From Macrostomum lignano (taxonomy: Eukaryota), in contig NIVC01001401.1 in assembly GCA_002269645.1 (NCBI GenBank), positions 138,761-202,760 of the forward strand: a DNA stretch of 64,000 bases, read 5' to 3'. Below, in pieces: positions 1 to 55,949 of this stretch. Both the position numbers and the translations under genes were made by a program. How positions within the stretch are numbered: the first letter of the stretch is position 1; each line of letters starts with the position of its first letter. The notes under the pieces are model-generated. The model searched no databases, had not been told where the DNA came from, and saw only the letters and a program-made list of their open reading frames with translations.

Positions 1-2764
1 CCGCAGGATAGATCCAAGCGACGGAGGTGGGTGCTCGGGGTCTGGAGGGGGAATTCGAGGGGAATTTTTTATTCGGCTTAGATTAGGGCTAGTGGGGAAT
101 TGCTCAGTTTAGATAAGGGCTAGTGGGAAATTGCTCAGCTTAGATAAGGCTAGTGGGGCATTGCTCAGCTTAGATAAGAACTAGTGGGAAATTGCTCAGC
201 TTAGATAAGGGCTAGTGGGGCATTGCTCAGCTTAGATAAGGGCTAGTGGGGCATTGCTCAGCTTAGATAAGAACTAGTGGGAAATTGCTCAGCTTAGATA
301 AGGGCTAGTGGGGAATTGCGCAGCTTAGATAAGGGCTAGTGGGCATTGCTCAGCTTAGATAAGGGCTAGTGGGGCATTGCTCAGCTTAGATAAGGGCTAG
401 TGGGGCATTGCTCAGCTTAGATAAGAACTAGTGGGAAATTGCTCAGCTTAGATAAGGGCTAGTGGGAAATTGCTCAGCTTAGATAAGGGCTAGTGGGGCA
501 TTGCTCAGCTTAGATAAGAACTAGTGGGAAATTGCTCAGCTTAGATAAGGCTAGTGGGGCATTGCTCAGCTTAGATAAGGGCTAGTGGGGCATTGCTCAG
601 CTTAGATAAGAACTAGTGGGAAATTGCTCAGCTTAGATAAGGCTAGTGGGGAATTGCGCAGCTTAGATAAGGCTAGTGGGGCATTGCTCAGCTTAGATAA
701 GGGCTAGTGGGGCATTGCTCAGCTTAGATAAGGGCTAGTGGGGCATTGCTCAGCTTAGATAAGAACTAGTGGGAAATTGCTCAGCTTAGATAAGGGCTAG
801 TGGGGCATTGCTCAGCTTAGATAAGGGCTAGTGGGGCATTGCTCAGCTGTGATAAGAACTAGTGGGAAATTGCTCAGCTTAGATAAGGGCTAGTGGGGAA
901 TTGCGCAGCTAGTAAAAGCCATCAATAGAAATTGCTAAGATTAATAAGGACTCACGTACTCCAGTATATACGCCTTTGTGCTGAAAAATCTTTCTCACCA
1001 TGACAACCGCCCTGTAGCAACGCCAAGCATCAAAGCTGTTTGCCCCAGCGAAGGCTGGACTAACGGCGGCTCCACAGTCATCATTGTGGGAGAGAACTTC
1101 TTCGACGGATTGCAGGTGGTATTTGGCACCATGCTGGTCTGGAGCGAGGTGAGTTCAATTTATTTTCATGTAGCTCTCTCATTTAACAGTATTTTAACGG
1201 GACCTTTCGCACTCCTTTGGCAGATGATTACGTCACATGCCATCCGAGTGCAGACTCCACCGCGTCACATACCAGGCGTAGTGGAAGTGACCCTGTCCTA
1301 CAAGTCCAAGCAGTTTTGCAAGAACGCGCCCGGCGTCTTTGTTTACACTTGTAAGAATTTGCAGTTTGTGCTGCTTTCGTAGTCTCGTAGCTCTACTAAA
1401 AGTAGCTTTGATGGGTTGGCGCTCGTATGTCTTAACATATACATGTAAATTGCTGTGTAGTTAAGTTGTATTGGCCAGGGTTGAAGGCTTCAGTACACAT
1501 TCTCTCCCCCAGCCCTCATGGAGCCGACCATAGACTATGGATTAAAGCGACTATGCCAGCTCATCCGCAGTCTCTCTCCCTGTCCCCATTCTCTCCCCCA
1601 GCCCTCACGGAGCCGACCATAGACTATGGATTCCAGCGACTATGCCAGCTCATACGCAGTCTCTCTCCCTGCCCCCCATTCTCTCCCCCAGCCCTCACGG
1701 AGCCGACCATAGACTATGGATTCCAGCGACTGTGCAAGCTCATACCGAGACACCCGGGCGACCCAGACCGACTGCCGAAAGAGATTATTCTAAAGCGAGC
1801 CGCAGACGTGGCCGAAGCTCTGTACACCATGCCGAGGCAGCACCAGCAGATGCAGCAGGCGCAGCAGCAACAGCAGCAAATTCATCACCAGCAGGCGCCG
1901 CCTCCACCGCCACTCAGTCCGTCAATGCAGGCGGCCAACAACAACAGCTTCCATGTAAGTTCGCAAAAATACCTTGGCTCCGCATTAATATCCGATTTTA
2001 TTGCAATAAAAGTTCACTGTCAAGAATCGACACCATTCCGCAGTCTTACACCAGCCAGCTCGCGTCTCATCTGCTGACTCGGTGGCCGGTCAGTGGTCAT
2101 CCTCGGCTATGGCGGCCGCTGCCGCAGCTGCCGCCGCTGCAGCTTCGACGGACGAGTACAACCGGCCAGTTGGTGGGTCCAGACAGGGTCAGCTGCCTCA
2201 CCATCACCAGCAGCATCAGCAACAGCAGCATCTTCAGCAACAGCAGCAGCAGCAGCAGCATCATCACCATCATGCAGTGCAGCATCCGGGATATGCTGAT
2301 CTTCAGCAGCAGCAGCAGCACCACCACCACCAGACGTTGGCTTCAAACGGCGGATCGGAAGTTGGAAATAACAACGACAACGGCACAGCTGCAGCCGCCG
2401 CCGCAGCCGCCGCAGCCGCCGCAGCAGCCGCCGCAGCCTCCTATCCTACTGCCGCCTCAGGCAGTATGGGAATGCAGATGGGCATGCAGATGGGCATGCA
2501 GATGGGCGTACCAATGGGCATGCCGGCGGTTACTGGGCCCGGTCAGGACTTTCTGCACGGAGCGCGTAAGTTTTAGCCAGCAAAACTCTTTTGTTGCTAC
2601 TTATTGATGATTTGTTAGTAGTGTACATTGTATGTAGCACACCACTTTCTAAACATTTTGCAGGCATGTCCTCTCTGCCCTTCACCTCAGTCAACCCGTT
2701 CGCTCTGAGCAGCTCGGGGCCGACTTACCCTGGCGGCGGCTCCATCGCTTCGCCAGTAAAATGA
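1..2764 (+). CDS. coe: COE (collier/Olf1/EBF) transcription factor, 3' part (IPT/TIG domain, atypical HLH, low-complexity C-terminus); 5' end lies outside the window
   Basis: Exons <1-26, 1018-1148, 1224-1350, 1692-1954, 2094-2565, 2664-2764, all GT-AG and phase-consistent. Translation [85 protein letters not shown]...[44 protein letters not shown] matches the EBF/collier IPT and HLH signatures. Ends [12 protein letters not shown]...SPVK*. Confidence 0.96.
72..912. repeat. 31-bp minisatellite (AAGGGCTAGTGGGGCATTGCTCAGCTTAGAT)n in COE intron
   Basis: About 27 tandem copies with minor variants, read directly. Confidence 0.95.
1497..1745 (+). repeat. Tandem 89/90-bp duplication of COE splice acceptor plus HLH exon start (2 extra copies)
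   Basis: CATTCTCTCCCCCAG|CCCTCA(C/T)GGAGCCGACCATAGACTATGGATT recurs with exon starts at 1513, 1602 and 1692 (spacings 89 and 90 bp). Confidence 0.93.
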
Positions 2765-13930: not shown

Positions 13931-14369
13931 GTTTCTACAAGACCGGAATGAACAGCACAGCAGTCATGAAGTGGAAAGCAGATGATTTTAGCCAAGGGCT
14001 GACGAGAGCAACATCCCAGATGATAAGCCACTCGGATAGGCTTTTATTCTCTTGGAACGAATCGCACGGGGCGAATGGGGCAAATTTGGCGAGCCGGCGA
14101 GGATCGGGGGGCTGATGGGGGGAGAAAAATCCCCATCAAGGAGGCAGTGTATATAAGGCATTATTCCCGCTGCAAGCCGGCTATTTGTCAGGCTTGCCCA
14201 GAGATTTCCTGGATCGATTTTTGGGAAAACACGCGCATTCTGACAGGCCCTACGCCTTCCATTGTAACTGGGGGTAAGCGGCCGCTGATTTTGATCGAGT
14301 CTGACTGCCGACTTGCACCGGCTGTTTGCTGCACTGACTCGGGCATTGAAACTTTGCCCGTCTTCTTTA

Positions 14370-15545
14370 GAATCCCTAGCTTAGATCCCGATCTTGAATC
14401 CCGAGCTTAGATCCGATCTTGAATACTTAGCTTAGATCCCGATCTTGAATCCGAGCTTAGATCCGATCTTGAATTCCTAGCTTAGATCCCGATCTTGAAT
14501 ACTTAGCTTAGATCCCGATCTTGAATCCCGAGCTTAGATCCCGATCTTGAATCCCGAGCTTAGATCCCTATCTTGAATCCCGAGCTTAGATCCCGATCTT
14601 GAATCCCGAGCTTAGATCCGATCTTGAATTCCTAGCTTAGATCCGATCTTGAATTCCTAGCATAGATCCCGATCTTGAATACTTAGCTTAGATCCCGATC
14701 TTGAATTCCTAGCTTAGATCCGATCTTGAATTCCTAGCTTAGATCCCGATCTTGAATCCCGAGCTTAGATCCGATCTTGAATTCCTAGCTTAGATCCCGA
14801 TCTTGAATACTTAGCTTAGATCCCGATCTTGAATCCCGAGCTTAGATCCCGATCTTGAATCCCGAGCTTAGATCCCGATTGTGAATCCCGAGCTTAGATC
14901 CCGATATTGAATCCCGAGCTCAGATCCTGATCTTGAATCCCGAGCTTAGATCCCGATCTTGAATCCCGAGCTTAGATCCCGATCTTGAATCCCGAGCTTA
15001 GATCCCGATCTTGAAACCCTAGCTTAGATCCCGATCTTGAATCCCGAGCTTAGATCCCGATCTTGAATACTTAGCTTAGATCCCGATCTTAAATTCCTAG
15101 CTTAGATCCCGATCTTGAATCCCGAGCTTAGATCCCGATCTTGAATCCCGAGCTTAGATCCCGATCTTGAAACCCTAGCTTAGATCCCGATCTTGAATCC
15201 CGAGCTTAGATCCCGATCTTGAATACTTAGCTTAGATCCCGATCTTGAATACTTAGCTTAGATCCCGATCTTGAATCCCGAGCTTAGATCCCGATCTTGA
15301 ATCCCGAGCTTAGATCCCGATCTTGAATCCCGAGCTTAGATCCCGATCTTGAATCCCGAGCTCAGATCCTGATCTTGAATCCCGAGCTTAGATCCCGATC
15401 TTGAATACTTAGCTTAGATCCCGATCTTGAATCCCGAGCTTAGATCCCGATTTTGAATCCCGAGCTTAGATCCCGATCTTGAATTCCTAGCTTAGATCCC
15501 GATCTTGAATCCCGAGCTTAGATCCCGATCTTGAATACTTAGCTC
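14370..15545. repeat. 26-bp minisatellite (GAGCTTAGATCCCGATCTTGAATCCC)n
   Basis: About 45 tandem copies. Confidence 0.95.
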
Positions 15546-16010: not shown

Positions 16011-19000
16011 ATGGTAACAAGCGACAGCGCCGCGAAAAACGACGCCGACAACAGTCGAAAGGCGGACGCGGAAGCAAAGCGGCGCGCCCGTGGCGCCGAG
16101 GCCGCCACAGCAATGGCAATGACGTCGGTGACCCTCGCGGAGACGTCGGCGACCCCGGCGGCTAAGCCGCATCGAGACGCCGCTGCTTCCGGTCGTCGGA
16201 GTAGACGGGGCGAGTCCAAGCACCGACGCAAGGATCAGAGACATCAGCAGCAACATCAGCACAGCTTCCTAGCTGCAGCGGTGGCGGCCACCGCCGCGGC
16301 CACAGTCGGGCTGCACTCGCTAGAAACGAAAGCGCCGATCGCGCACGACGATGAAGAAGACGAGGGGGCTGCGGCAGCGGCGGCAGCGGCTACGGGCTCA
16401 GACGCCGCCGCCCTGCTGGTTGCCGCTGCGTCAGGCGGCGGCGGTCCGACGCAAAACGGCGTCTCCGATGGGTGTAGAAGCGGCGTGAATACTCTGGCGA
16501 ATCCGAGTGCAGCTGAAGGTGACAGAACTCACTTTTGCGTACCTATGGGAGGCTCACCATTGTTACTCCATAGACTGGATTCCAGCGACCGTGCCAGCTC
16601 ATCCCCAGTCTCTCTCCCTGTCCCCATTCTCTCCCCCAGCCCTCACGGAGCCGACCATAGACTATGTATTCCAGCGACCGTGCCAGCTCATCCCCAGTCT
16701 CTCTCCCTGCCCCCATTCTCTCCCCCAGCCCTCACGGAGCCGACCATAGACTATGGATTCCAGCGACTATGCCAGCTCATCCCCAGTCTCTCTCCCTGCC
16801 CCCATTCTCTCCCCCAGCCCTCACGGAGCCGACCATAGACTATGGATTCCAGCGACTGTGCCAGCTCATCCCCAGTCTCTCTCCCTGCCCCCATTCTCTC
16901 CCCCAGCCCTCACGGAGCCGACCATAGACTATGGATTCCAGCGACTGTGCCAGCTCATCCCCAGTCTCTCTCCCTGTCCCTATTCTCTCCCCCAGCCCTC
17001 ACGGAGCCGACCATAGACTATGGATTCCAGCGACTATGCCAGCTCATCCCCAGTCTCTCTCCCTGCCCCCATTCTCTCCCCCAGCCCTCACGGAGCCGAC
17101 CATAGACTATGGATTCCAGCGACTATGCCAGCTCATCCCCAGTCTCTCTCCCTGCCCCCATTCTCTCCCCCAGCTCTCACGGAGCCGACCATAGACAATA
17201 GATTTATACATAGAGGTAGCTAAATTCTTAAGCTACTTTAAGTAGTTCAAAAGCAACTTTGAAAATGTGCCGCAACTTTTATTTTAGTTTTAATTGGCTC
17301 TCTGAAGTATATGCGCAGAACAGAACTATCTGCGGGTACAAAAGTGAACACTAGAGTCACCGTGACACTTAGGTTTGATTGGCACAGCTGATCGCTCAAT
17401 GGAGACCCTCAAGTTTTCATCAGCAAATGTCGTCGGTTCGTAGCAATTAAAAAATTTAAACGTTTATTTGGCCGCCAAAGGTGATAAAGAGGAATTAATA
17501 AACAAATATGATAAACTATAAACGAAACTAAACTAACTGCGTTTGGGCATGACGCCAATGGAATAAGCTGATTTTCAACTACGCTATTCCAAACGGATCT
17601 AGAATCTGCTTTAGGGATGGCAGTTTCCACTCCAGATATTCTACTAGTTATAGATCTCCATGGATAGCCTTTGATGATAGGTAATGTTAAATCATGGATA
17701 TATCTTCAGACCCAAGCCTAGCTTAGATGGTCCAGGCTCCGACCACATGCTGGGGTCTGTCCAAGCGCAAACTGGTCAAACCAATCTGCACCGCTGCTGC
17801 CACCCTGCTTGGGCTCACAGCACTGTTTCTGGACGCGGAGAGCAGAAATGCGAAAGTTTTGCCCCCTACTAACAATTTTAACTGCTTTGCCTGTCTTGTC
17901 TGCTTCAGTGCTTCAGTAAAGCAGATTCGCCAAAAGTTGTTAACTTTTGCGGCATCCCATCCGACAGTCCATCCCGGGGTCGCGCTAAGATATTATCCCC
18001 TTAGCTGGGCCAAGAAGACCGAAAAACTAGAATTTGGAGTGGCAACTCTTCTTTCCAGGCCAGTTCTTTGACACTAAATGAAACTGGTATCCCTTTATCC
18101 CAAGGGATCGGGATCGGGATCGGGATCGGGATCGGGATCGGGATCGGGATCGGGATCGGGATCGGGATCGGGATCGGGATCGGGATCGGGATCGGGATCG
18201 GGATCGAGACCGCGATTCGACAGAAGATCTGAGAGAAAAGTTTCTACTCCAAATTCTGGTTCTGGGTGTCCTTGGCTGGGGCCGTCCCTCAAGTAGACCA
18301 CACGGGTTGCCCGCCAATAAACCAGCGATCATGCAGTCCCGCTTCGCTTCATATATTAGCCATCCCCGTTATCCTCTACATGGATGCACTTTTCCTTTGT
18401 CTCTGCACACCGACCGTGCAGAGCCAGTCGGGGCCGCGTTGAAGGGCATCGAGGACGACAACCTGACAGGCGGCCTGCTCACCGAACGCGAGTGCCAGGC
18501 TCTGGTCCTGAGAAATCTGCATTACCGGCCTCGCCCATTCAGCGCCTTCACAACCTACAGCGACGCGATGCAGAGCGAAGACGACATCGAGGAGCTGCGA
18601 GCGACGGCCGGCCAGCGAACGTCCAACTACGACAATTTGCCTGCGTCAGCCGCTGCTGCAGCTGCTGCTGCTGCGGGTTCGCCGCCGGAAAGGCCGGTGC
18701 GAACGAGGCGTCAGGATGCGCAGACGAAGCTGCTGCTGGCGCCACTGGCCGCCGGCGGCGGGGTGACGTCTGCGGCTGCGGCGGAGACTGAAGATGACAG
18801 TGAGAGTCAGATTGACAGGGAGTTGAAGGGAGGGATGAAGGATGTGAAGATAAATCGAGATTCAAGAAGAGATTCGTAAATGGATTCGTGAATGGATTCG
18901 TGAATGGATTCGTGAATGGATTCGTGAATGGATTCATAAATGGATTCGTGAATGGATTCATAAATGGATTCGTGAATGGATTCGTGAATGGATTCGTGAA

Positions 19001-22000
19001 TGGATTCGTGAATGGATTCGTGAATGGATTCATAAATGGATTCGTGAATGGATTCGTAAATGGATTCGTAAATGGATTCGTGAATGGATTCGTAAATGGA
19101 TTCGTGAATGGATTCGTGAATGGATTCGTGAATGGATTCGTGAATGGATTCGTAAATGGATGCGTGAATGGATTCGTGAATGGATTCGTGAATGGATTTG
19201 TGAATGGATTCGTGAATGTATTCGTGAATGGATTCGTGAATGGATTCGTGAATGGATTCGTGAATGGATTCGTGAATGGATTCGTGAATGGATGCGTGAA
19301 GGGATTCGTGAATTGATTCGTGAATGGATTCGTGAATGGATTCGTGAATGGATTCGTGAATTGATTCGTGAATGGATTCGTGAATGGATTCGTGAATGGA
19401 TGCGTGAAGGGATTCGTGAATGGATTCGTGAATGGATTCGTGAATGGATTCGTGAATGGATTCGTGAATGTATTCGTGAATGGATTCGTGAATGGATTCG
19501 TGAATGGATTCGTGAATGGATTCGTGAATGGATGCGTGAAGGGATTCGTGAATTGATTCGTGAATGGATTCGTGAATGGATTCGTGAATGGATTCGGCAA
19601 AAGGTCAAGAAAAAGAGGTGACCCTTCAGTCCAGCTTAAATCCTGCCGCCGCTCGCAGAGGCGGCAGACACCGATGGCAAGAAGGCCGCCGCCGACCAGG
19701 CGACAGACTCGCCCGAGAAGCAGAAAAATCAGCAGCAGCAGCAGCAGCAGCAGAACGACGGCAAGCCGCCCACTCGGCCGAAGGTGTCGAAGTGGAAGCG
19801 ACGAAGGCGTCGCTGCGTCTCCTGCCTGAAGACCTCCGTGGCCTTCCTGTTCTCGCACATCGGCCTGTGCCTGCTGGTGATTGGCTACACCCTGTCAGGG
19901 GCTTACCTGTTCGTCTACCTGGAGCACGATCGGTCGGTCATGGACAATCGGATGTACACGGAGAGCGTGGCTCAGACGAGAATTCATATGAGGTTTGAGA
20001 CTGGGACTGGGAAGGAAGCTGCTGAGAGCTTGCCCTAAGAAAATATTGATAATCTGAGCCACTAGATTATTTAAGAATAGATCTAAAAATTGAGACAAGA
20101 GAGACTGGATCTATAGACTAGAATAGGAAGACTATGCGAGACTAGATCTGGGAAACTCGATATACGAGACTAGATCAGGAAGACTAGATCTAAAGACTAA
20201 GAGCTGAGAGTCTAAATCTGAGAGACTAGATCATTGAGACTAGATCTTAGAGACTAAATAAGGGAGACTAAATCTGTGAGACTTGATAATAAAGACTAAG
20301 TCTACGAGACTTGATATGAAAGACTAGATCTGAGAGACTAAATCTGAGAGACTAGATCTGAGAGACTAGATCTGAGAGACTAGATCTGAGAGACTAGATC
20401 TGAGAGACTAGATCTGAGAGACTAGATCTGAGAGACTAGATCTGAGAGGCTAGATCTGAGAGACTAGATCTGAGAGACTTGATCTGAGAGGCTAGATCTG
20501 AGAGACTAGATCTGAGAGACTAGATTTGAGAGACTAGATCTGAGAGACTAGATCTGAGAGACTAGATCTAAAAGACTAGATCTAAGAGACTAGAACTCAG
20601 ACTCTACACAATCAACCCTGTCTATCGATAGAAGCTTACAAAAATCAAGAACTTCGAAAGTTGAACACGCACTCTATTCAGGCCTTTCATACCATCAGTT
20701 GCAAGATCCCTGCTTCTCAGGAATGTATTCTTTCCTCCTAGCCAGCCATGCGGGGTGAACCTCAGATTAATAATTAACTGAGTAACCCCAGCAGCTGTTG
20801 CGGCAGAGAACGGGGATGGAGTAGAGGTGCCGGAAAAACAAACTAAAATTCGATTCGCACTCAAGCAGATTTTCGGCAAACAAAGGAAGAGAGGAGAGTC
20901 TCAGTGAACATGAATAATTCACTGATGCGGCGCTTAGTATTGCACTTGAGCTCGTAGGATCAGCAGTGGGAGGTCTTGGTAATGCGCGCTCAAGACCTCA
21001 TTGCCAATCCACTGTAATTGCAGTGCACTAACTGAACTCGACCAATTAGAGAAATTCTTGCTTTTAATTGCGGTAGGAAATCATGTTAATGTTTTTCTGG
21101 GCCAAATTTATGGATGTTACTCATCTAGCTTGTTGATTACTCATCTATAGCTTGTAGATCACTCATATATAGCTTGTAGATTACTCATATATAGCTTGTA
21201 GATTACTCATATATAGCTTGTAGATTACTCATATATAGCTTGTAGATTACTCATATATAGCTCGTAGATTACTCATATATAGCTTGTAGATTACTCATAT
21301 ATAGCTTGTATATTACTCATATATAGCTTGTAGATTACTCATATATAGCTTGTATATTACTTATCTAGTCTGTAGATTACTCATCTAGCTACAACTGCCC
21401 AACCCCACAGCGGCAACATGACCCAACCAGTCGTCGAGATGATCCAGGAGCTCAAGTCGGACTTTGAGCAGTTGTTTCACGTTCTAGAAGACATGGCAGA
21501 TGAGTCCTACAAGAAGCTGCTCAACATCAGCCAGATGCTGAGTTCGAGTCGGCTCCGACTGGCCGACGCCGTGCGCGAAGTTGGCGACGCAAATTCGCAG
21601 CTGTTGCACCAGCTTCAGGGGGACTTCACCCAGCATGAGGACAGCATCGAGACGCAGGTGGGGGTCCTCGGCAGCCTCCTGTCCAACATCAGCTGTCCGC
21701 CGTGCCCGTTTGGGCATCCGGGTGGCAACCGGTCTGGCAGCACCGGTCGCAGCATGCAGGACTACACTAACATGGTGCACAGGATCCGACAGCAGCTGGA
21801 TAAGTAAGCGGGTCCGCGACAACTGACTGCCCAAGAATAAACTCTAACCTAAAATCTAAGCTAAACCCTAACCTAAACCCTATAACCTAAACCCAATAAC
21901 CTACACCCTAACCAAAACCCTATATCCTAAACCCTATAACCTAAACCCTAACCTACACCTAACCTAAACCCTATAACCTAAACCCTATAACCTAAACCCT

Positions 22001-25000
22001 AACCTAAACCCTATAACCTAAACTCTAACCTAAACCCTAACCTTAACCATAACTTTAGCCCTAACCCTAACCTAAATCGTAGACAGAAGAGAATAAGCAT
22101 CGTATAAGCAATAAAATCGATTAAAAAATCGATCGAAAAAAAATCTATATTAACAAATCAATATTAAAATATCGATCATGAAAAAACGAGACTGAATGAA
22201 TCAATGAGTAAAAAAACGGATTATTAGGTCAATAGTCCATTTATTATTAATAGAAAATTACTATATATATATAAGTAACAGACAACTGAAAATCCGAAAA
22301 TGCTTCATCTTCAGCAATCAAATTTTCTATAAAAAATTCAGATCTCAGCTCGGCATCCGCAAGGAGCTTCGGCAGGCTGTCAACTCGGCGAAGGCTCGCA
22401 TCCGAGAGGAGGTGTTCCAGCTGTTCAATCATTCAACCGCCTACCGGCGCCAGGTGCTGCAGGTGCAGGCCTCTTTAGAATTGATGCAGGCCAGCCTCTA
22501 CAATTTCACCAGCGTTGCCCACCTCGAGTTGGAGAACAATCGAGTTCTGCTAGAGAAAATCAAAGGCGGTAAAGATTATTCCACTGTTGGCACCAATACT
22601 ATGATGGCCAGGTACAATTATTCGGCCACTTTGCGTACCTGGGCGCTGAAACTGGAGGAGTCTGTTTACAGCTACGCCATGCGGGGCTGGAGTCGGCCGG
22701 ACGAGGACAAGCCGGGTGTCAATCAGACTATCTGGACTTTTCCTGGCGCTCTGCTGTACGCCATCACCATAGTGACTACCATTGGTGAGCGGCGCTTGTG
22801 ACTATTGCTGATGTACTGATTTTCTACTTGTATCCATACATGCTTCTGACTCTGTGATCTCATCTCTCCACACTCCTGACTCTGTGATCTAGTCTCTCCA
22901 CACTCCTGACTCTGCGATCTAGTCTCTCCACACTCCTGACTCTGTGATCTAGTCTCTCCACTCTTCTGACTCTGTGATCTAGTCTCTCTACTCATATCGC
23001 TCTGCGATCTAGTCTCTCCACTCTCCTGGCCCCGAGATCTAGTCTCTCCACTCTTCTGGCTCCGTGATCTAATCTCTCAACTATTCTGACTCCGTGATCT
23101 AGTCTCTCCACTCTTCTGGCTCCGTGATCTAATCTCTCAACTATTCTGACTCCGTGATTCTAGTCTCTCCACTCTCCTGGCCCCGAGATTTAGTCTCTCC
23201 TCTTCAGATTTTCCCTCTCTCTTTTAGTCTTGCTTTGCGAATTGGCGGTGGGAAGTTTATAATAAGAGCGCATAGTGTACTTTTGCTGTGAGACTACATG
23301 TATGTCATTCATCCTGGGAGTTCTGGCTGTCCCCCCTCCGAAGTTGTGCATCCAATTCGCAGGACGTCTAGCTTGGCTAATCGGTTTTCTGTGTTAATCA
23401 GAGCGATCATTAAATTTTTATGCGTTGCCAGGGCACTGATGTCTCAACTGATCTTTCTAGCATATCTATGCATCTGTGAGTTTATGTATCCATGCAATCC
23501 ATGCATCTATACTTCTAGGTATATGCATCTATCTAGGGGTGAGCGTCGGACTCACGACTGAAAGGTCGGGGGTTCGATTCTCGAGCCACCTCGGAACAAT
23601 TTGTGTCCTTGAGCAAGACATTAGCTGGGGTAATTGAGGGTGTGTGTGGCGACCCCCCCTCCCCAGTCCTTAGACTGAACAGGCGTACGCAGCCTTCAGA
23701 TGTGCTGCGCATCTAGACATCTATATCAATCTATATATCCATGCATCTATAAATCTATGCATCTATATTATTACCTAGGAAGTGTCACCACGAGCTGAAA
23801 TACGTGTAGAATACGAGCCCATACCGTATATCATGACCATGGACACGGCAGAGTGGACTTCAATTACAATCTGCAATAATTGCCTGCAAGCAATTGGGGA
23901 AATCCCATTTTTGAATTCGCATCGGTTAACCAGCTGAGTAAGCCCCAAAAAAATTGGTCCCAGTGTAATCTGTATGCTTTCAATTAAAGATTTCTGAAGC
24001 GAAACTGCAGATGATTATGCACAGACTTAGCCAAGCAAATGGTATCGATCAGTGCAGTTACCTCGCTCAGTTGCCTACAGTGCCAGCCAGCCAGATTGGT
24101 CAGCCATGCCTTCACACTGATGACCTCTTCGGGAGGCGGATCACCGTTCTTTTATGATCATTTTTCTCTTTTTCTGTGTCTGTCTCTTCCATATCTCCTC
24201 TGGTTTGAAAGTCTTCCCAATTGCGAGATTAAACTGTCGAGGGCTATTGAACCTAAAAATCATAAAAATGCATGGCACAACTCGACTCCTTGGTTTCATG
24301 AATCCATTTTATCATCTCTGTTACAAATACTGTCACATAGTCAGCTAAGAATGACAAAATAGATTCATAAAACCAATGAGCCGAGCCATGCAATTTTAAT
24401 GAATTTCAGGCACAGGACATGTACAAATGTACGTAGAATAAAACATTAAGCTTTATGAATATCAATAGAGCTATAACAAAGGCACAACATATCAAAAGAT
24501 GAACATTGGGTCTGCCTCCTGCTGAAAAAAGATTTTCTTGGAAAAATTTTTTCCAAGAAACGAGATTTCCCGTCCTTGTACTTGAGTAGTCCTTGCTGAG
24601 AATTTTATTTCTAAGAAATTCACTACAATGCCCCCCTCCGTTTTTCTACTATTGGATTTTGGACTGCTGTTATCGTTTAGTCCTGGCCTCAGTCGTAGAT
24701 TTTCAAGCTAAATTGGCCAATTCCAAGAAAACAGGTCCGACAGTCGAGACGGATTCGATCTTAATTAAGAGGAAAGCCAACATTCTGGCTAGCTGTGCAA
24801 CTATCGGTAAAACCCAAGTTGCGCGGGGCCGCATCCCAGCGGGATTGGGGGGGGGGGGGGCATGGACAAACCAGAGCTGTGCGTTCTGCAGTTTGCCGTT
24901 GTCCTTCAAATCTCGTCCCGATGCAAAACCAGCATGCAGTACCTGTGTTCTGCGCTAGTTTTGGCCTCTCATGGTTCGCTCACGGTCAGAGAGAGAAGGG

Positions 25001-26750
25001 GCCACGAATTTCAAACTGTTTCTAAGAAAAGGAAACAGGTCGAGTTGGTTATTAAAAGATTCAAGGGCACTGAGGGAGCGGAGAGGCAGATTCAAGGGCA
25101 CTGAGGGAAGGGAGAGGAAGATTCAAGGACACTGAGGGAAGGGAGAGGCAGATTCAAGGGCACTGAGAGAGCGGAGAGGCAGATTCAAGGGCACTGAGGG
25201 AGCGGAGAGGCAGATTCAAGGACACTGAGGGAGCGGAGAGGCAGATTCAAGGACACTGAGGGAAGGGAGAGGCAGATTCAAGGGCACTGAGGGAGCGGAG
25301 AGGCAGATTCAAGGACACTGAGGGAAGGGAGAGGCAGATTCAAGAACACTGAGGGAGCGGAGAGGCAGATTCAAGGACACTGAGGGAAGGGAGAGGCAGA
25401 TTCAAGGACACTGAGGGAAGGGAGAGGCAGATTCAAGGGCACTGAGGGAGCGGAGAGGCAGATTCAAGGACACTGAGGGAAGGGAGAGGCAGATTCAAGA
25501 ACACTGAGGGAGCGGAGAGGCAGATTCAAGGACACTGAGGGAAGGGAGAGGCAGATTCAAGGACACTGAGGGAGCGGAGAGGCAGATTCAAGGACACTGA
25601 GGGAGCGGAGAGGCAGATTCAAGGACACTGAGGGAGCGGAGAGGCAGATTCAAGGACACTGAGGGAGCGGAGAGGCAGATTCAAGGACACTGAAGAAACA
25701 GAATGGCAGATTTCTTACTATTTACGGACTACTTACGGACGCATTCAAACACAAAGGGCTATTGCTACTACAAGTAGTGCAAATTTTAATTAATTGTATA
25801 AAATTGGTCCCAAACTGGCTGCCATCGCAGGCTACGGCCACGTGGCGCCCAAAACGGTTGCCGGCCGGCTGTGCACCATCTTCTACGCCATGGTGGGCAT
25901 CCCGCTGATGCTGCTATGCCTGCACAACCTCGGCTCCTTCCTGGCTGACGTGTTTCGCCTCTGCTACCAGCACTGCTGCCTCCGTCTGTGGCGCAGACGA
26001 CGGATGCGCCGGCTGGCCCGCCATCACGAGGCCATCAGCAGTCGCAGTCGGCGGGGCCGGGTGCGCGCCTTTGACCAGCTGTCGGAGATCATGCCCATCT
26101 CCAGCCGCTACCGGTCCCGACGGAGCAACCGTAGCGGCGCTACAGTCCGGCGCGGCGGCGGCGGCGGCAGCGGACGGAGCGGTCTGTCGACGGCTACGAC
26201 GGCCGGCGGGCGACACGGGGCGGCGGAGGCGACGCTGGGCGGCAACGGTGGATCGCCGCCAGCGATGATGTCGCGTCGACGAATCTTCCAGCTGGCCGAC
26301 CCGAGCACCGGGCAGACGCTGGACCTGTGCGTGCTACCGCCGGCGTCGGTGGGAACCGCCGGGCGGGCCGCCAGCTCCTACGCCGCCTCGACGCCAGTCA
26401 GCAGCGTCGAGGATCTCGGCGAAGTAATCCGCGTGCCGGTCTGGCTGACCCTGACGGTGTTCTGCATCTACATCCTGACCGGGGCGGTGCTGTTCTACTC
26501 CTGGGAGCAGTGGGGCTTCATGGACTCCGTCTATTTCGTGTTCATCACCCTGACAACCATCGGGCTGGGTGACTTCGTGCCCGGCATGCAAGAGTCGTCC
26601 TGGACTGACGAGGCCAAGCCAATCACCTGCGGCCTGTACCTGCTGTTCGGCCTGGCCATGATCGCCATGTGCTTCCAGCTGATGCAGGAGGAGGCCAAGG
26701 ACAAGGTGAAATCGTTCGGCAGAAAGATCGGACTGCTGGACGATGGCTGA
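16011..26750 (+). CDS. Two-pore-domain potassium channel (K2P, invertebrate TWK/TWIK-like), about 991 aa, with greatly enlarged M1-P1 extracellular loop
   Basis: Exons 16011-16518, 18422-18799, 19659-19992, 21411-21803, 22342-22784, 25831-26750 (2976 nt, phases 1,1,2,2,1 all consistent, GT-AG). M1 [24 protein letters not shown]; P1 [17 protein letters not shown]|GYGHVAPKT; M2 [19 protein letters not shown]; M3 [21 protein letters not shown]; P2 [25 protein letters not shown]; M4 [18 protein letters not shown]. Exons 1-2 are assigned by phase and composition only, so they are less certain. Confidence 0.93.
16569..17197 (+). repeat. About 7 copies of an 89-bp unit derived from the COE acceptor/HLH exon, inside K2P intron 1
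   Basis: Unit CCAGCGACTATGCCAGCTCATCCCCAGTCTCTCTCCCTGCCCCCATTCTCTCCCCCAGCCCTCACGGAGCCGACCATAGACTATGGATT is nearly identical to 1497-1745; it translates [18 protein letters not shown]. Confidence 0.95.
18104..18205. repeat. (GGGATC)17 microsatellite
   Basis: Perfect hexamer repeat. Confidence 0.97.
18870..19594. repeat. 12-bp minisatellite (GTGAATGGATTC)n filling K2P intron 2
   Basis: About 60 copies; source of several spurious ORFs. Confidence 0.96.
20323..20590. repeat. 14-bp minisatellite (TAGATCTGAGAGAC)n, with degenerate copies back to about 20100
   Basis: Tandem copies read directly. Confidence 0.92.
21113..21390. repeat. 22-bp minisatellite (TTACTCATATATAGCTTGTAGA)n
   Basis: About 12 copies. 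Confidence 0.92.
21843..22075. repeat. Degenerate telomere-like (AACCCT/AACCTA) array in K2P intron 4
   Basis: CCCTAACCTAAACCCTATAA-type repeats. Confidence 0.82.
22843..23200. repeat. 30-bp minisatellite (CTGACTCTGTGATCTAGTCTCTCCACACTC)n
   Basis: About 12 diverging copies immediately after the exon 5 donor. Confidence 0.9.
23532..23690 (+). mobile_element. tRNA-derived SINE fragment
   Basis: tRNA-like head with B-box GGTTCGATTC (23571-23580), followed by TGTGTCCTTGAGCAAGACA, which resembles the conserved central motif of CORE/V/Meta-type SINEs. Confidence 0.65.
25057..25693. repeat. 31-bp minisatellite (GGCAGATTCAAGGACACTGAGGGAGCGGAGA)n
   Basis: About 20 copies. Confidence 0.95.
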
Positions 26751-31958: not shown

Positions 31959-34900
31959 CCAGCCATCAGAGCAGTCTTCCAACCTGCACGCAGTCGAGCT
32001 GGAACTGTGGCTCCACAGGTGCGGGTGGCGTAGGCGGAGGCGGCGGCAGCGAGTCGTCGATAGCGGAGGCGCCGGCCGCGGCGGTGGACAAGCGCACGGG
32101 GCAGCTGCTGACGCGGTACAGGTGGCGCAGGAACTCCGCCTTGCTGCAGTCGCGCACCAGCACCAGGTCGGTGCAGCCGTCGCCCAGGTGGGCAAACGGC
32201 ACGGCACCGGCGGCGCTCTTAGTCGATCGGCAGGGCATCAGGAAGCTGTTGACGGCGACGAAGCGACCGGTGACGGTGCGGAGCTGCCGCCGTTGCGGCT
32301 CCTTCGCCTCCGGGGCGCACTCGGCGAGCGCGTCCGATGAGCAGACTGAGCAGTCGCGAGTGCACACAGCGTGGCATCTGAATTGGAATGGCGATGCAAC
32401 ATAGCTACCTATGGACTTTTAATGGCATCGCAAAATACCCTGCAGAATTTTAATAGCATCAAAATCTATCTAAAATACCCCCCACGGAGAATCGGTGAGG
32501 TAGCCCAAAATACCCCCATGGAGAATCGGTGAGGTAGCCCAAAATACCCCCATGGAGAATCGGTGAGGTAGCCCAAAATACCCCCATGGAGAATCGGTGA
32601 GGCAGCCCAAAATACCCCCATGGAGAATCGGTGAGGTAGCACAAAACACCCCCATGGAGAATCGGTGAGGCAGCCCAAAATACCCCCATGGAGAATCGGT
32701 GAGGTAGCCCAAAATACCCCCATGGAGAATCGGTGAGGCAGCCCAAAATACCCCCATGGAGAATCGGTGAGGTAGCCCAAAATACCCCGGGAGAATTGGT
32801 GAGGCAGTCCCCTAAACCGCAGATCAACCCGCAGCTCACCTGCCGTCGGCCTCCAAAAAGCTGATCTCCAGAGCGTGAGACCGCAGGTTGAGCAGCCGGT
32901 GAGCTCCCACCAGGTCGTACCTGGCCGGCCCCATCCAGCGCAGCGGCTCGCTGGACCTGGCCACCTCGCCAAAATAGCCGTAGCCCAGCAGGCTGATATT
33001 ATACGTCAGGAACTGGCCGGAATCGGAGTACACGGACGCCATGTCCATGGCGACGCGTCGGCCGAGAATTATTTGAACAATGGCGGTGAGAGCGTCGCTT
33101 GTGCCGTTGATGCTGTGGACTACGGTGTCCGTGCTGCCTGCAGGGAGCGAGGGGCGATTGCAGTTTACTTTTTGCGAACTATTATTGGCGGGGAATCCTT
33201 AATGATCGTATGGGAATTCCTAATGATTTTTGGACGGGAATCCCAATGATTGTTGAAGGGTAATCCAAATAATTGTTGGAAAAGAAATTCCTGAAGGGAA
33301 ATAGAAAAACTTATAGAAGGTAAATGACTGTAAAAAGGAAATCCCAATGGCTATAAAAAGGAATCTCTAATGAATATAAAAAGGAATCCCTAACGACTTT
33401 TGGAAGGGAATCCAAAATGATTGTTGGAAGGGAATCCCTAATGACTGTCAAATGGGGAATCCCTAATGATTGTAAAAGGGGAATCCTTAATGACTGTAAA
33501 AATGGGAATCTCTAAGGACTGTGAAAGGGAAATCCCTAATATCTGTAAAAGGGGAATCCTTAATGACTGTCAAAGGGGAATCCCTAATATCTGTAATAGG
33601 GGAATCCTTAATGACTGTCAAAGGGGAATCCCTAATTATTTAAAAGGGAAATCCCTAATGATTATAAAAGGGGAATCCTTAATGACTGTAAAAGGGAATC
33701 CCTAATTACTGTAAAAGGGGAATCCCTAAATAATATAAAAGGGGAATCCCTAATGACTGTAAAAAGGTAATCCCTAATGACTGTGAAAGGAGAATTCCTA
33801 GTGACTGTAAAAGATTCCCCAACTATCCTTGGATGGGATCCGCCAATGACTGCGGGAAGGAAACGCCCCCCCCCCCAGCGCTTGCTGGGAGCTCGCATTT
33901 ACCAGCTGGCACAATGCCAATCGTGTGATCGGGCCGCAGCTCAGGATCGTCAACAGTGTGAGCAGTCAGGCCTTCGTCCAGTCGCTTGCGCAGCAGCAGG
34001 CCGTGGAACAGCTCAGACAAGATGCCGTCGCCGCCGACCCCAACAATGCTGGAATAGAAATAAAAAAATTGAAGGATTAAGCTAAGCTCGAACAGATGTG
34101 CCCCATTCGATGCCTGCACATCTTAAATTTTATTCAATCTTCTTTTCTGTAAAATATATTTTTTTGTGGACTACTGTTTATTTTATTGAATTTTTGCTTT
34201 GGGCCTTTATGTCAGCAAAAACTCTATTACAATATCATAGCTATTTGAACTATGATAATGACTTTCAGAATATATTATCAATCACAATTTCAAAAAAATT
34301 GATTTACATGTATGATATGCTTTTCCAGTTCATATCCAGTATGAGGATCTGTGAGATTGGCGGCGGCCCAGCAACTGAGGATCTGTGAGGCTGGCCCAGC
34401 AACTGAGGATCTGGGAGGCTGGCCCAGCAACTGAGGATCTGGGAGGCTGGCCCAGCAACTGAGGATCTGGGAGGCTGGCCCAGAAACTGAGGATCTGGGA
34501 GGCTGGCCCAGAAACTGAGGATCTGGGAGGCTGGCCCAGAAACTGAGGATCTGTGAGGCTGGCCCAGCAACTGAAACTCTGGGAGGCTGGCCCAGAAACT
34601 GAGGATCTGTGAGGCTGGCCCAGCAACTGAGGATCTGGGAGGCTGGCCCAGAAACTGAAACTCTGTTAGGCTGGCCCAGAAACTGAAACTCTGGGAGGCT
34701 GGCCCGGCAACTGAGGATCTGGGAGGCTGGCCCAGCAACTGAAACTCTGGGAGGCTGGCCCAGAAACTGAGGATCTGGGAGGCTGGCCCAGAAACTGAGG
34801 ATCTGTGAGGCTGGTCCAGCAACTAATGAGTCTTGGAAGTGTAATTAATGGTAAAACAACAAATAATTTCTGAGCTGTGTGTGACAGCTCAGTGTCAAGC

Positions 34901-50949: not shown

Positions 50950-55949
<5,000 letters not shown>

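What the first reader, a model, noticed from the sequence alone, without database searches (positions are those of the whole stretch)
19920..22735. K2P channel with an extracellular M1-P1 cap of about 280 aa: helical, eight N-glycosylation sequons, CPPCP motif
Known: the K2P cap between M1 and P1 is normally about 55-60 aa, often with one inter-subunit cysteine. Seen: here about 283 aa, built largely from two dedicated exons (21411-21803, 22342-22784). It has amphipathic heptad-like runs ([33 protein letters not shown]; [23 protein letters not shown]), eight sequons (NMT, NIS, NIS, NRS, NHS, NFT, NYS, NQT) and a central CPPCP resembling an antibody hinge disulfide motif. Inference: a tall disulfide-linked coiled-coil ectodomain that could act as a tether or ligand/mechanical sensor, an unusual K2P architecture.
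Basis: partly seen in the sequence, partly recalled or inferred. Interest (0 to 1): 0.7.

Follow-up and report, generated by a model that had tools for sequence, protein, structure and literature searches.

The report
Flatworm potassium channel with giant cap
A two-pore potassium channel gene of the flatworm Macrostomum lignano really does encode an outer "cap" about five times the usual length, predicted to be a long, sugar-coated helical hairpin with a CPPCP motif at its tip; trematode relatives also have oversized caps, but nobody appears to have described them.

Summary
The window is Macrostomum lignano DNA. It holds a six-coding-exon K2P gene, identical to GenBank PAA68368.1 (Mlig031602.g1), a model from an RNA-seq-derived annotation.

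- **The loop.** The M1-P1 loop is 284 aa (19925-22732). It has eight N-glycosylation sequons (shuffles give 2.2±1.3) and only two cysteines, both in CPPCP.
- **Predicted shape.** AlphaFold predicts a 114-aa helix, an 18-aa Gly/Pro/Ser coil holding CPPCP, then about 130 aa of helix. This is an elongated version of the normal cap hairpin. Confidence is low to moderate.
- **Constraint.** Against a second genomic copy, the loop shows 5 synonymous and 0 non-synonymous differences, so it is under constraint.
- **Relatives.** The loop matches nothing else in 1.84 billion representative proteins, Pfam or the PDB. Non-flatworm relatives (TWK-7/9, KCNK18-like) have loops of 67-113 aa. The gene clusters with trematode K2Ps (bootstrap 0.99) whose loops are 184-250 aa but cannot be aligned with this one.

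An oversized cap is therefore a trait of this flatworm clade. The Macrostomum form is the longest, and the only one with a heptad signal or CPPCP. Verdict: a new variant of a known kind, of moderate interest.

The parts
14179..14274 (+). Upstream exon of the deposited transcript model (read in frame in the 'partial' GenBank protein; probably 5' UTR)
   Evidence: tblastn of P0001 residues 1-32, 100% identity
16011..16518 (+). Coding exon 1 (ATG at 16011); cytoplasmic N-terminus
18422..18799 (+). Coding exon 2; cytoplasmic N-terminus
19659..19992 (+). Coding exon 3: end of the N-terminus, M1 (19841-19924) and the first 22 loop residues (from 19925). This is the start of cap helix C1, continuous with M1
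   Evidence: AF2 helix 2-72 runs from M1 into the loop
21411..21803 (+). Coding exon 4: 393 nt, phase 2 at both ends, encodes loop only (loop residues 23-154). It holds the ascending helix, the apex and the start of the descending helix, plus four sequons
   Evidence: 393 is divisible by 3, so skipping the exon would keep the reading frame (inference, not tested)
21688..21741 (+). Predicted apex coil (loop residues 116-133, [18 protein letters not shown]). CPPCP is at 21694-21708 and holds the only two Cys of the loop
   Evidence: AF2 coil 163-182 in the core model and 116-133 in the loop-only model; coordinates
22342..22784 (+). Coding exon 5: loop residues 154-284 (descending helices, four sequons, the conserved GW motif RGWSRPD at 22682-22702), then the P1 helix and TTIG from 22733
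25831..26750 (+). Coding exon 6: the rest of the P1 filter (G)YGH, M2 (25863-25955), a roughly 160-aa cytoplasmic M2-M3 linker, M3, P2 (filter TTIGLGD at 26553-26573), M4, and stop TGA at 26748-26750
   Evidence: The phase-1 intron inside the GYG glycine codon is shared with Opisthorchis

Best explanation
This is an expressed, selectively constrained Macrostomum lignano K2P channel gene (Mlig031602.g1). It belongs to a flatworm clade related to the invertebrate TWK-7/TWK-9/KCNK18-like channels, and in this clade the extracellular cap has been greatly enlarged.

Shown:
- The two ends of the normal cap are kept: the helix that continues from M1, and the GW motif 12 residues before the P1 helix.
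- About 210 extra residues lie between them.
- The loop is enriched in sequons, shows a heptad-like pattern, and has accumulated only synonymous changes between gene copies.

Predicted: each subunit forms one long antiparallel helical hairpin. It has about 114 aa going up, an 18-aa Gly/Pro/Ser turn carrying CPPCP, and about 130 aa coming down.

Inferred:
- In the obligate K2P dimer the two hairpins pack into a four-helix stalk above the pore. If straight, it would be up to about 150-170 A tall, against about 35 A for a normal cap.
- The stalk is clamped at its tip by two inter-subunit disulfides of the CPPC pair. This is the position where TWIK-1, TREK and TRAAK carry their single apex cysteine.
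- The stalk is coated by up to eight N-glycans.
- K+ still leaves through the side portals at the base.
- The most likely role is an enlarged self-interaction and stabilisation domain that fixes homodimer assembly and shields the pore mouth, rather than a dedicated receptor.
For: - **Gene and expression.** The exon model has consistent phases. It is identical to PAA68368.1, and two further copies have the same loop. The GenBank annotation of Mlig_3_7 was built from StringTie/TACO RNA-seq assemblies (PMC5730564).
- **K2P identity.** Two Ion_trans_2 stretches at E=5.6e-34. Filters are TIGYG and TIGLG. A profile of the family matches all solved K2Ps at 1e-62 to 1e-32. Foldseek top hits are all K2Ps, TM-score normalised to the target (TMt) 0.5-0.6.
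- **Hairpin.** The core AF2 model has helices 2-72, 75-98 and 103-162, coil 163-182, then helices 183-276 and 285-316. The loop-only model has helices 2-115, 134-228 and 234-269. Its nearest shapes in the PDB, none significant, are chemoreceptor and Smc-type antiparallel hairpins.
- **Heptad pattern.** Score 0.62 against 0.47±0.035 in shuffles, exceeded by 0 of 300.
- **Exterior location.** 8 sequons against 2.2±1.35 expected.
- **Constraint.** Between copies g1 and g3 the loop has Sd=5, Nd=0 (pS 0.026). The cytoplasmic N-terminus has pN/pS 0.72, and introns differ by about 3.5-6%.
- **Cap ends conserved.** The alignment places the extra residues between the C1 start and the GW motif.
- **Background.** The K2P cap is a coiled-coil self-interacting domain with an apex cysteine (PMC4906011).
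Against: - Loop confidence in AF2 is low to moderate (pLDDT 40-77; pTM 0.32 for the loop alone). Only monomers were modelled, so the four-helix stalk and its height are inferred.
- The core model shows breaks at loop residues 25-26, 51-54 and 229-236. These would allow folding back into a shorter bundle.
- The heptad measure is home-made. No established coiled-coil predictor was available.
- CxxC motifs can also form an intrachain disulfide.
- The nearest non-flatworm relatives have no loop cysteine at all, so a covalent link is not needed in this subfamily.
- Selection evidence rests on only 5 substitutions between very recent duplicates.
- Nothing here bears on function.
Confidence: 0.55

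Rival explanations
1. Compact ectodomain: the five predicted helices of each loop fold back on each other into a globular helical bundle on top of the pore, not a tall stalk. CPPC would then form an intrachain or structural disulfide.
For: The core AF2 model breaks the helices at core residues 73-74, 99-102 and 277-284. Loop pLDDT is low. Trematode orthologues show no heptad signal and carry Cys-rich segments, which suggests knot-like folds in the clade.
Against: The loop-only model gives an unbroken 114-aa helix and a 95-aa helix. The heptad register runs almost uninterrupted over loop residues 27-95 and 136-215. The turn lies close to the middle of the loop, as a single hairpin requires.
Confidence: 0.2
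2. Receptor or tether: the stalk binds an extracellular partner or matrix component, and transmits force or ligand binding to the selectivity-filter gate through the P1 helix.
For: The loop connects directly to the P1 helix and is under purifying selection. The enlarged cap is retained across a flatworm clade.
Against: No known ligand-binding or adhesion domain is detectable in Pfam, the PDB or 1.84 billion representative proteins. The loop sequence is not conserved between Macrostomum and trematodes, which argues against a conserved partner. No experimental data exist.
Confidence: 0.12
3. Alternative-splicing or annotation effect: exon 4 is a cassette exon, and the main channel isoform has a 153-aa loop without CPPCP.
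For: Exon 4 is 393 nt with the same phase at both ends, so skipping keeps the frame. The Opisthorchis orthologue has no introns at these positions.
Against: All three deposited transcript-derived models include exon 4. Exon 4 has only synonymous differences between copies. Without it the roughly 130-aa descending helices would lack a partner helix. Even the skipped form would keep a loop more than twice the normal length.
Confidence: 0.08
4. Functionless expansion: the extra loop is tolerated filler with no role of its own.
For: There is no sequence conservation between flatworm lineages, and no homologues were found anywhere.
Against: The loop shows 0 non-synonymous against 5 synonymous differences, while the N-terminus of the same gene evolves at pN/pS 0.72. 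Sequon enrichment and an ordered heptad pattern are not expected of filler.
Confidence: 0.05

Closest known systems
Canonical K2P cap, the self-interacting domain of TWIK-1, TRAAK, TREK and TASK (PMC4906011; PDB 3UKM, 3UM7, 4BW5, 6RV2)
   Same: It sits between M1 and P1. The first helix is continuous with M1. It is a two-helix hairpin with heptad a/d residues. There is a cysteine at the turn in many members. It lies above the pore, leaving side portals.
   Different: The loop is 284 aa against about 57 aa in vertebrate K2Ps measured the same way. It has two cysteines in CPPCP instead of one, and eight sequons instead of one or two. No solved K2P has anything comparable.
Invertebrate TWK-7 / TWK-9 / KCNK18 (TRESK)-like channels (e.g. 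Lineus 'TWK-9-like', Folsomia 'TWK-7', Tachypleus 'KCNK18-like')
   Same: These are the best sequence matches for the membrane core, 49-55% identity over 217 conserved residues. They share the [11 protein letters not shown]1 motif and the GW(D)G motif before P1.
   Different: Their loops are 67-85 aa (113 aa in one annelid) and have no cysteine in almost all members.
Trematode orthologues (Schistosoma spp., Heterobilharzia, Trichobilharzia, Opisthorchis, Clonorchis, Paragonimus, Dicrocoelium), annotated as 'KCNK18' or 'TWiK protein 18'
   Same: They fall in the same clade (NJ bootstrap 0.99, 54-57% core identity). They share the phase-1 intron inside the GYG codon. Their loops are long (184-250 aa) and rich in sequons.
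   Different: The loops are not alignable with the Macrostomum loop. The helical part before the GW motif is 126-157 aa against 268 aa. They carry an extra 44-97 aa Cys-rich tail after the GW motif. They have no CPPCP and no significant heptad signal. In Opisthorchis the loop is encoded in one exon together with M1.
IgG1 core hinge CPPCP
   Same: The five-residue motif is identical. In IgG1 it forms two parallel inter-chain disulfides, and the Pro-Pro spacer favours inter-chain over intra-chain pairing (textbook knowledge; compare IgG4 CPSC and the S228P change).
   Different: This is a motif resemblance only. There is no homology, and pairing here is untested.
Antiparallel helical-hairpin four-helix bundles (bacterial chemoreceptor cytoplasmic domain, PDB 3G67 and 2CH7; Smc arm)
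   Same: This is the overall shape of the AF2 loop model: a long hairpin that would dimerise into a four-helix bundle.
   Different: The Foldseek matches are not significant (best E=0.54, TM 0.25-0.31). This is a shape analogy only.

Membership tests
K2P (two-pore-domain K+ channel, KCNK/TWK) | Two pore domains per subunit, in the order M1-P1-M2-M3-P2-M4 | tested here: met
   Pfam Ion_trans_2 at E=5.6e-34 with two stretches. The AF2 helices fit this order. Foldseek top 50 hits are all K2P structures. A family profile hits all solved K2Ps.
K2P (two-pore-domain K+ channel, KCNK/TWK) | K+ selectivity-filter signature T-x-G-[YFL]-G in both P loops | tested here: met
   P1 is TTIGYGH, split by the intron between exons 5 and 6. 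P2 is TTIGLGD at 26553-26573.
K2P (two-pore-domain K+ channel, KCNK/TWK) | Extracellular helical cap formed by the M1-P1 linker | tested here: met
   The loop is predicted helical, with the first helix continuous with M1. Sequon enrichment fits an extracellular location. The size is about five times the norm.
K2P (two-pore-domain K+ channel, KCNK/TWK) | Dimeric assembly and K+ leak current | not testable with these tools
   Needs biochemistry and electrophysiology.
TWK-7/TWK-9/KCNK18-like invertebrate subfamily | Closest sequence relationship of the membrane core, and the GW(D)G motif before P1 | tested here: met
   Best hits. The NJ tree places Macrostomum plus trematodes inside or next to this group, with vertebrate KCNK18 and KCNK4 outside. 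GWSR aligns with GWDG. Only a distance tree on 217 residues was made.
Flatworm long-cap K2P clade (Macrostomum plus trematodes) | Monophyly of the core, a shared intron position, and an M1-P1 loop of at least 184 aa | tested here: met
   Bootstrap 0.99. The phase-1 intron in the GYG codon is shared with Opisthorchis. Loops are 184-284 aa. Homology of the loop sequences themselves was tested and not detected.
Coiled coil | Heptad periodicity of hydrophobic residues in long helices | tested here: inconclusive
   A home-made a/d score beats 300 of 300 shuffles and the helices are long. No established predictor (COILS, MARCOIL, DeepCoil) and no dimer model was available.
Disulfide-linked K2P cap (TWIK-1 Cys69 type) | Cysteine at the apex of the cap hairpin that forms an inter-subunit bond | tested here: inconclusive
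   The only two loop cysteines lie in the predicted turn, so the position criterion is met. Bond formation cannot be tested here.
N-glycosylated ectodomain | Occupied N-x-S/T sites | not testable with these tools
   Only the enrichment of sequons was shown (8 against 2.2±1.35).

The most novel reading that the evidence does not exclude
The stalk is a true extracellular sensor. It would be a 150-A, disulfide-clamped, glycosylated four-helix lever that couples matrix tension or a bound ligand directly to the P1 helix and filter gate. That would make a K2P channel with a built-in receptor ectodomain, with differently built counterparts in schistosomes and liver flukes that are exposed, parasite-specific surfaces.
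Probability: 0.1. Interest if true: 0.85.

Novelty: new variant of a known kind. Interest (0 to 1): 0.5.

Why it matters
The cap is the hallmark of K2P channels, yet its function is still poorly understood. Every solved structure has the same short, roughly 35-A version.

A natural channel with a cap several times longer, kept under purifying selection, offers three things:
- A ready-made experiment on what the cap does, whether assembly, pore shielding or gating.
- A test of whether cap length and an apex disulfide can be varied freely.
- A case of a lineage-specific extracellular domain growing out of an existing helical hairpin.

Orthologues in schistosomes, liver flukes and lung flukes also carry large, fast-evolving, glycosylated caps with no counterpart in vertebrate K2Ps. 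These loops are therefore candidate parasite-specific extracellular epitopes on an ion channel. That is of practical interest, though entirely unexplored.

Tried and rejected
- **Loop alone against Pfam:** only sub-threshold coiled-coil-type noise.
- **Loop alone in the word-indexed 5.8-billion-protein search:** nothing.
- **Loop alone by phmmer against 1.84 billion representatives:** only itself and P0032. P0032 is a 12-fold tandem-repeat artefact whose unit looks like a P450 C-terminus, and was rejected as spurious.
- **Loop against PDB sequences:** best E=0.24.
- **Foldseek of the loop model:** best E=0.54.
- **Loop homology within flatworms:** BLASTP of the Macrostomum loop against the Schistosoma loop, and hhalign against trematode and cestode loop alignments, showed no similarity.
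- **Internal duplication between the two halves of the loop:** local score 34 against 28.8±4.7 in shuffles, P=0.16, rejected.
- **Second gene copy in the window:** none found.
- **Cestode sequences as orthologues:** rejected, because Echinococcus groups with another paralogue.
- **Shared 'dedicated loop exons' as evidence of common origin:** rejected, because Opisthorchis encodes M1, the loop and the P1 helix in one exon.
- **Literature:** searches for flatworm or schistosome K2Ps, long K2P caps and the gene id found nothing relevant.
- **tRNA scan:** ARAGORN found no tRNA in the window.


Full report
**What is in the sequence**

The region lies in a multi-exon eukaryotic gene on the + strand, with introns full of minisatellites. 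Translating the open frames and joining them at GT/AG sites gives six coding exons: 16011-16518, 18422-18799, 19659-19992, 21411-21803, 22342-22784 and 25831-26750. Their phases are compatible and the product is 991 aa.

M1 ([28 protein letters not shown]) ends at 19924. The P1 helix ([18 protein letters not shown]|YGH) begins at 22733. The P1 filter is split by a 3-kb phase-1 intron. Exon 6 carries M2, a roughly 160-aa cytoplasmic linker, M3, P2 (TTIGLGD) and M4.

The M1-P1 loop is 284 aa. The one inaccuracy is that exon 5 also encodes the P1 helix, so only exon 4 is loop-only.

**Is it more than chance?**

- Eight of the 15 loop asparagines sit in sequons. Composition-preserving shuffles give 2.2±1.35 (P about 4e-4). 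The remaining 707 residues, cytoplasmic or membrane, hold only two.
- A simple a/d heptad score averaged over the loop is 0.62, against 0.47±0.035 in shuffles (0 of 300 reach it). The register is nearly continuous over loop residues 27-95 and 136-215.

**Is the gene model real?**

The core protein is 100% identical over its full length to GenBank PAA68368.1, 'hypothetical protein BOX15_Mlig031602g1, partial [Macrostomum lignano]'. That model also has an upstream exon, found at 14179-14274.

The GenBank annotation of assembly Mlig_3_7 was derived from a genome-guided transcriptome: StringTie/TACO on RNA-seq plus a de novo assembly, with ORFs called by TransDecoder (PMC5730564). Exon inclusion therefore reflects transcript assemblies, not ab initio prediction.

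Two further copies, g2 on the same contig and g3 on another, encode an identical protein from residue about 333 onward. That stretch includes the whole loop.

I fetched the g3 locus (L001). Exons 4 and 5 differ from the window at five sites and exon 6 at three. All eight are synonymous. Introns differ by about 3.5-6%. By Nei-Gojobori counting:

| Region | Synonymous differences (Sd) | Non-synonymous differences (Nd) | Ratio |
|---|---|---|---|
| M1-P1 loop | 5 | 0 | pS 0.026, pN 0 |
| Cytoplasmic N-terminus | 5.5 | 11.5 | pN/pS 0.72 |

With 78% of loop sites non-synonymous, five out of five synonymous has a probability of about 5e-4 under neutrality. The sample is small but it points to constraint.

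Exon 4 is 393 nt with phase 2 at both ends, so skipping it would keep the frame. I could not test this. However, the skipped product would leave the roughly 130-aa descending helices without a partner helix.

**What it is**

Pfam finds Ion_trans_2 twice (E=5.6e-34) and nothing above threshold in the loop.

An AlphaFold2 model of the 655-aa core, made with 27 homologues, has mean pLDDT 66 and TM segments at 90 or above. It gives:
- helix 2-72, which is M1 running straight into the loop
- helices 75-98 and 103-162
- a coil at 163-182 holding CPPCP and a Gly/Pro/Ser-rich stretch
- helices 183-276 and 285-316
- then the P1 helix

Its top 50 Foldseek hits are all TREK, TASK or TRAAK structures.

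The loop modelled alone gives helices 2-115, 134-228 and 234-269 (pLDDT 36-77, pTM 0.32). Its nearest PDB shapes, none significant (best E=0.54), are chemoreceptor-type and Smc-type antiparallel hairpins.

An alignment of M1-P1 segments shows that both ends of the usual cap are kept. These are the post-M1 helix and the GW motif, RGWSRPD here against GWDG in relatives, 12 residues before P1. About 210 extra residues lie between them.

The simplest reading is a normal K2P cap hairpin whose two helices have each been lengthened about four- to five-fold, with the turn still in the middle. The turn is where TWIK-1, TREK and TRAAK carry the cysteine that links the two subunits. The cap is described as a coiled-coil self-interacting domain (PMC4906011).

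**Relatives**

The loop alone finds nothing in the word-indexed database. In an exhaustive phmmer scan of 1.84 billion representatives it finds only itself and a tandem-repeat artefact. It finds nothing in the PDB.

The whole core finds invertebrate TWK-7/TWK-9/KCNK18-like channels. Loop lengths, measured from the Glu that ends M1 to the Trp that starts P1, are as follows:

| Group | M1-P1 loop (aa) |
|---|---|
| Nemertean, mollusc, arthropod and nematode relatives | 67-85 |
| One annelid | 113 |
| One unrelated nematode K2P | 121 |
| Fish KCNK4 and KCNK18 | 57 |
| Trematode orthologues | 184-250 |
| Cestode sequences | 134 |
| Macrostomum lignano | 284 |

A second search with a flatworm profile recovered full-length trematode sequences: eight Schistosoma species, Heterobilharzia, Trichobilharzia, Opisthorchis, Clonorchis, two Paragonimus and Dicrocoelium. 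Their loops carry 4-14 sequons and 5-10 cysteines. The cestode sequences have neither sequons nor cysteines.

A neighbour-joining tree on 217 conserved residues joins Macrostomum to the trematodes with bootstrap 0.99. The cestode sequence falls with another paralogue.

Opisthorchis shares the phase-1 intron inside the GYG glycine codon. It encodes M1, the loop and the P1 helix in one exon.

The loops of Macrostomum, trematodes and cestodes show no detectable similarity to each other. Trematodes lengthen the pre-GW part only to 126-157 aa, against 268 aa here. They add a 44-97 aa Cys-rich tail after the GW motif, and they show no significant heptad signal.

An oversized cap is thus a property of this flatworm clade. 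Either it is ancestral and evolving fast, or it was enlarged repeatedly. The Macrostomum version is the longest, the only one with a heptad signal, and the only one with CPPCP.

**Mechanism, with the status of each step**

- Shown: K2P identity, loop size, sequon enrichment, heptad-like pattern, conserved cap ends, constraint between copies, clade distribution.
- Predicted: a helical hairpin with CPPCP in the turn.
- Inferred:
  - dimeric four-helix stalk, up to about 150-170 A if straight (114 residues x 1.5 A)
  - two inter-subunit disulfides, by analogy with the apex cysteine of other K2Ps and with the IgG1 hinge, where CPPC favours inter-chain pairing
  - glycan coat
  - side-portal ion exit
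  - main role as an enlarged assembly and shielding domain

The tether or sensor idea is possible but has no support. The lack of loop conservation across the clade argues against a conserved partner.

**Limits**

- There is no dimer model, no established coiled-coil predictor and no read-level RNA-seq.
- The survey of invertebrate K2Ps covers only the 50 or so sequences that three capped searches returned. It does not cover, for example, all 46 C. elegans TWKs.
- The tree is a distance tree.
- Literature searches of the held library found no description of flatworm K2P caps. That is absence in that library only.

**Verdict**

The feature is real and correctly read by the first stage. It is a new variant of a known kind, an extreme elaboration of the K2P cap shared in differing forms by trematode orthologues. 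It is of moderate interest, and the proposed sensor function is unproven.

Noticed in passing
window 14370-15536, 16568-17204, 18104-18206, 18871-19596, 20138-20594, 21126-21384, 21838-22066, 22843-23200, 25057-25693: Every intron of the K2P gene carries its own unrelated minisatellite array, with periods of 26, 89, 6, 12, 14, 22, 12-14, 30 and 31 bp and up to 60 copies. Together they make up a large part of the intron sequence. The paralogous locus L001 has the same arrays with different copy numbers.
   Followed up: partly
window 21838-22066: The array in intron 4 is built on TAAACCCTAACC, a degenerate telomere-like (CCCTAA-type) repeat at an interstitial position.
   Followed up: no
window 23540-23600: A stretch resembling the 3' half of a tRNA (…GGTCGGGGGTTCGATTCTCGAGCC…) lies in intron 5. 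ARAGORN calls no tRNA anywhere in the window, so it may be a tRNA-derived SINE fragment.
   Followed up: partly
window 948-1379 (+), 31969-32418 (-), 43613-43996 (+), 54366-55076 (+): Exons of neighbouring genes are present: an IPT/TIG domain (E=2e-11), a ceramide-kinase C-terminal domain (E=1.5e-8; the same neighbour follows the g3 copy in L001), a protein-kinase fragment (E=2e-6) and a DM (doublesex/mab-3) DNA-binding domain (E=1.6e-12).
   Followed up: partly
window 16011-19840 versus L001 12266-16765: The cytoplasmic N-terminus of the channel evolves almost neutrally between the g1 and g3 copies (pN/pS 0.72, plus length changes in His/Gln runs). Everything from M1 onward is identical at the protein level.
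   Followed up: yes
P0031, P0052, P0054, P0030, P0023 (public flatworm protein models); L002 2036-2060: Several deposited trematode models end in 'TTIGK[LIF]'. This is read-through into the conserved phase-1 intron inside the GYG codon (checked in Opisthorchis: ATTG|GTAAGTGA). The Taenia asiatica model has an intron-like insert at the same spot, and S. mansoni P0044 lacks much of M1 and the loop. The public annotations of this clade are therefore often truncated or mis-spliced.
   Followed up: partly
window 26553-26573: The second pore loop reads TIGLGD (GLG) in Macrostomum, whereas all trematode orthologues and most relatives have GFG. GLG occurs in some K2Ps such as TWIK-1. Its effect here is unknown.
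   Followed up: no
P0032 (database protein, not in the window): The only non-self hit of the exhaustive loop search is a 1218-aa protein made of about 13 tandem copies of an 87-aa unit resembling a cytochrome P450 C-terminus. The match is a repeat-inflated artefact.
   Followed up: yes
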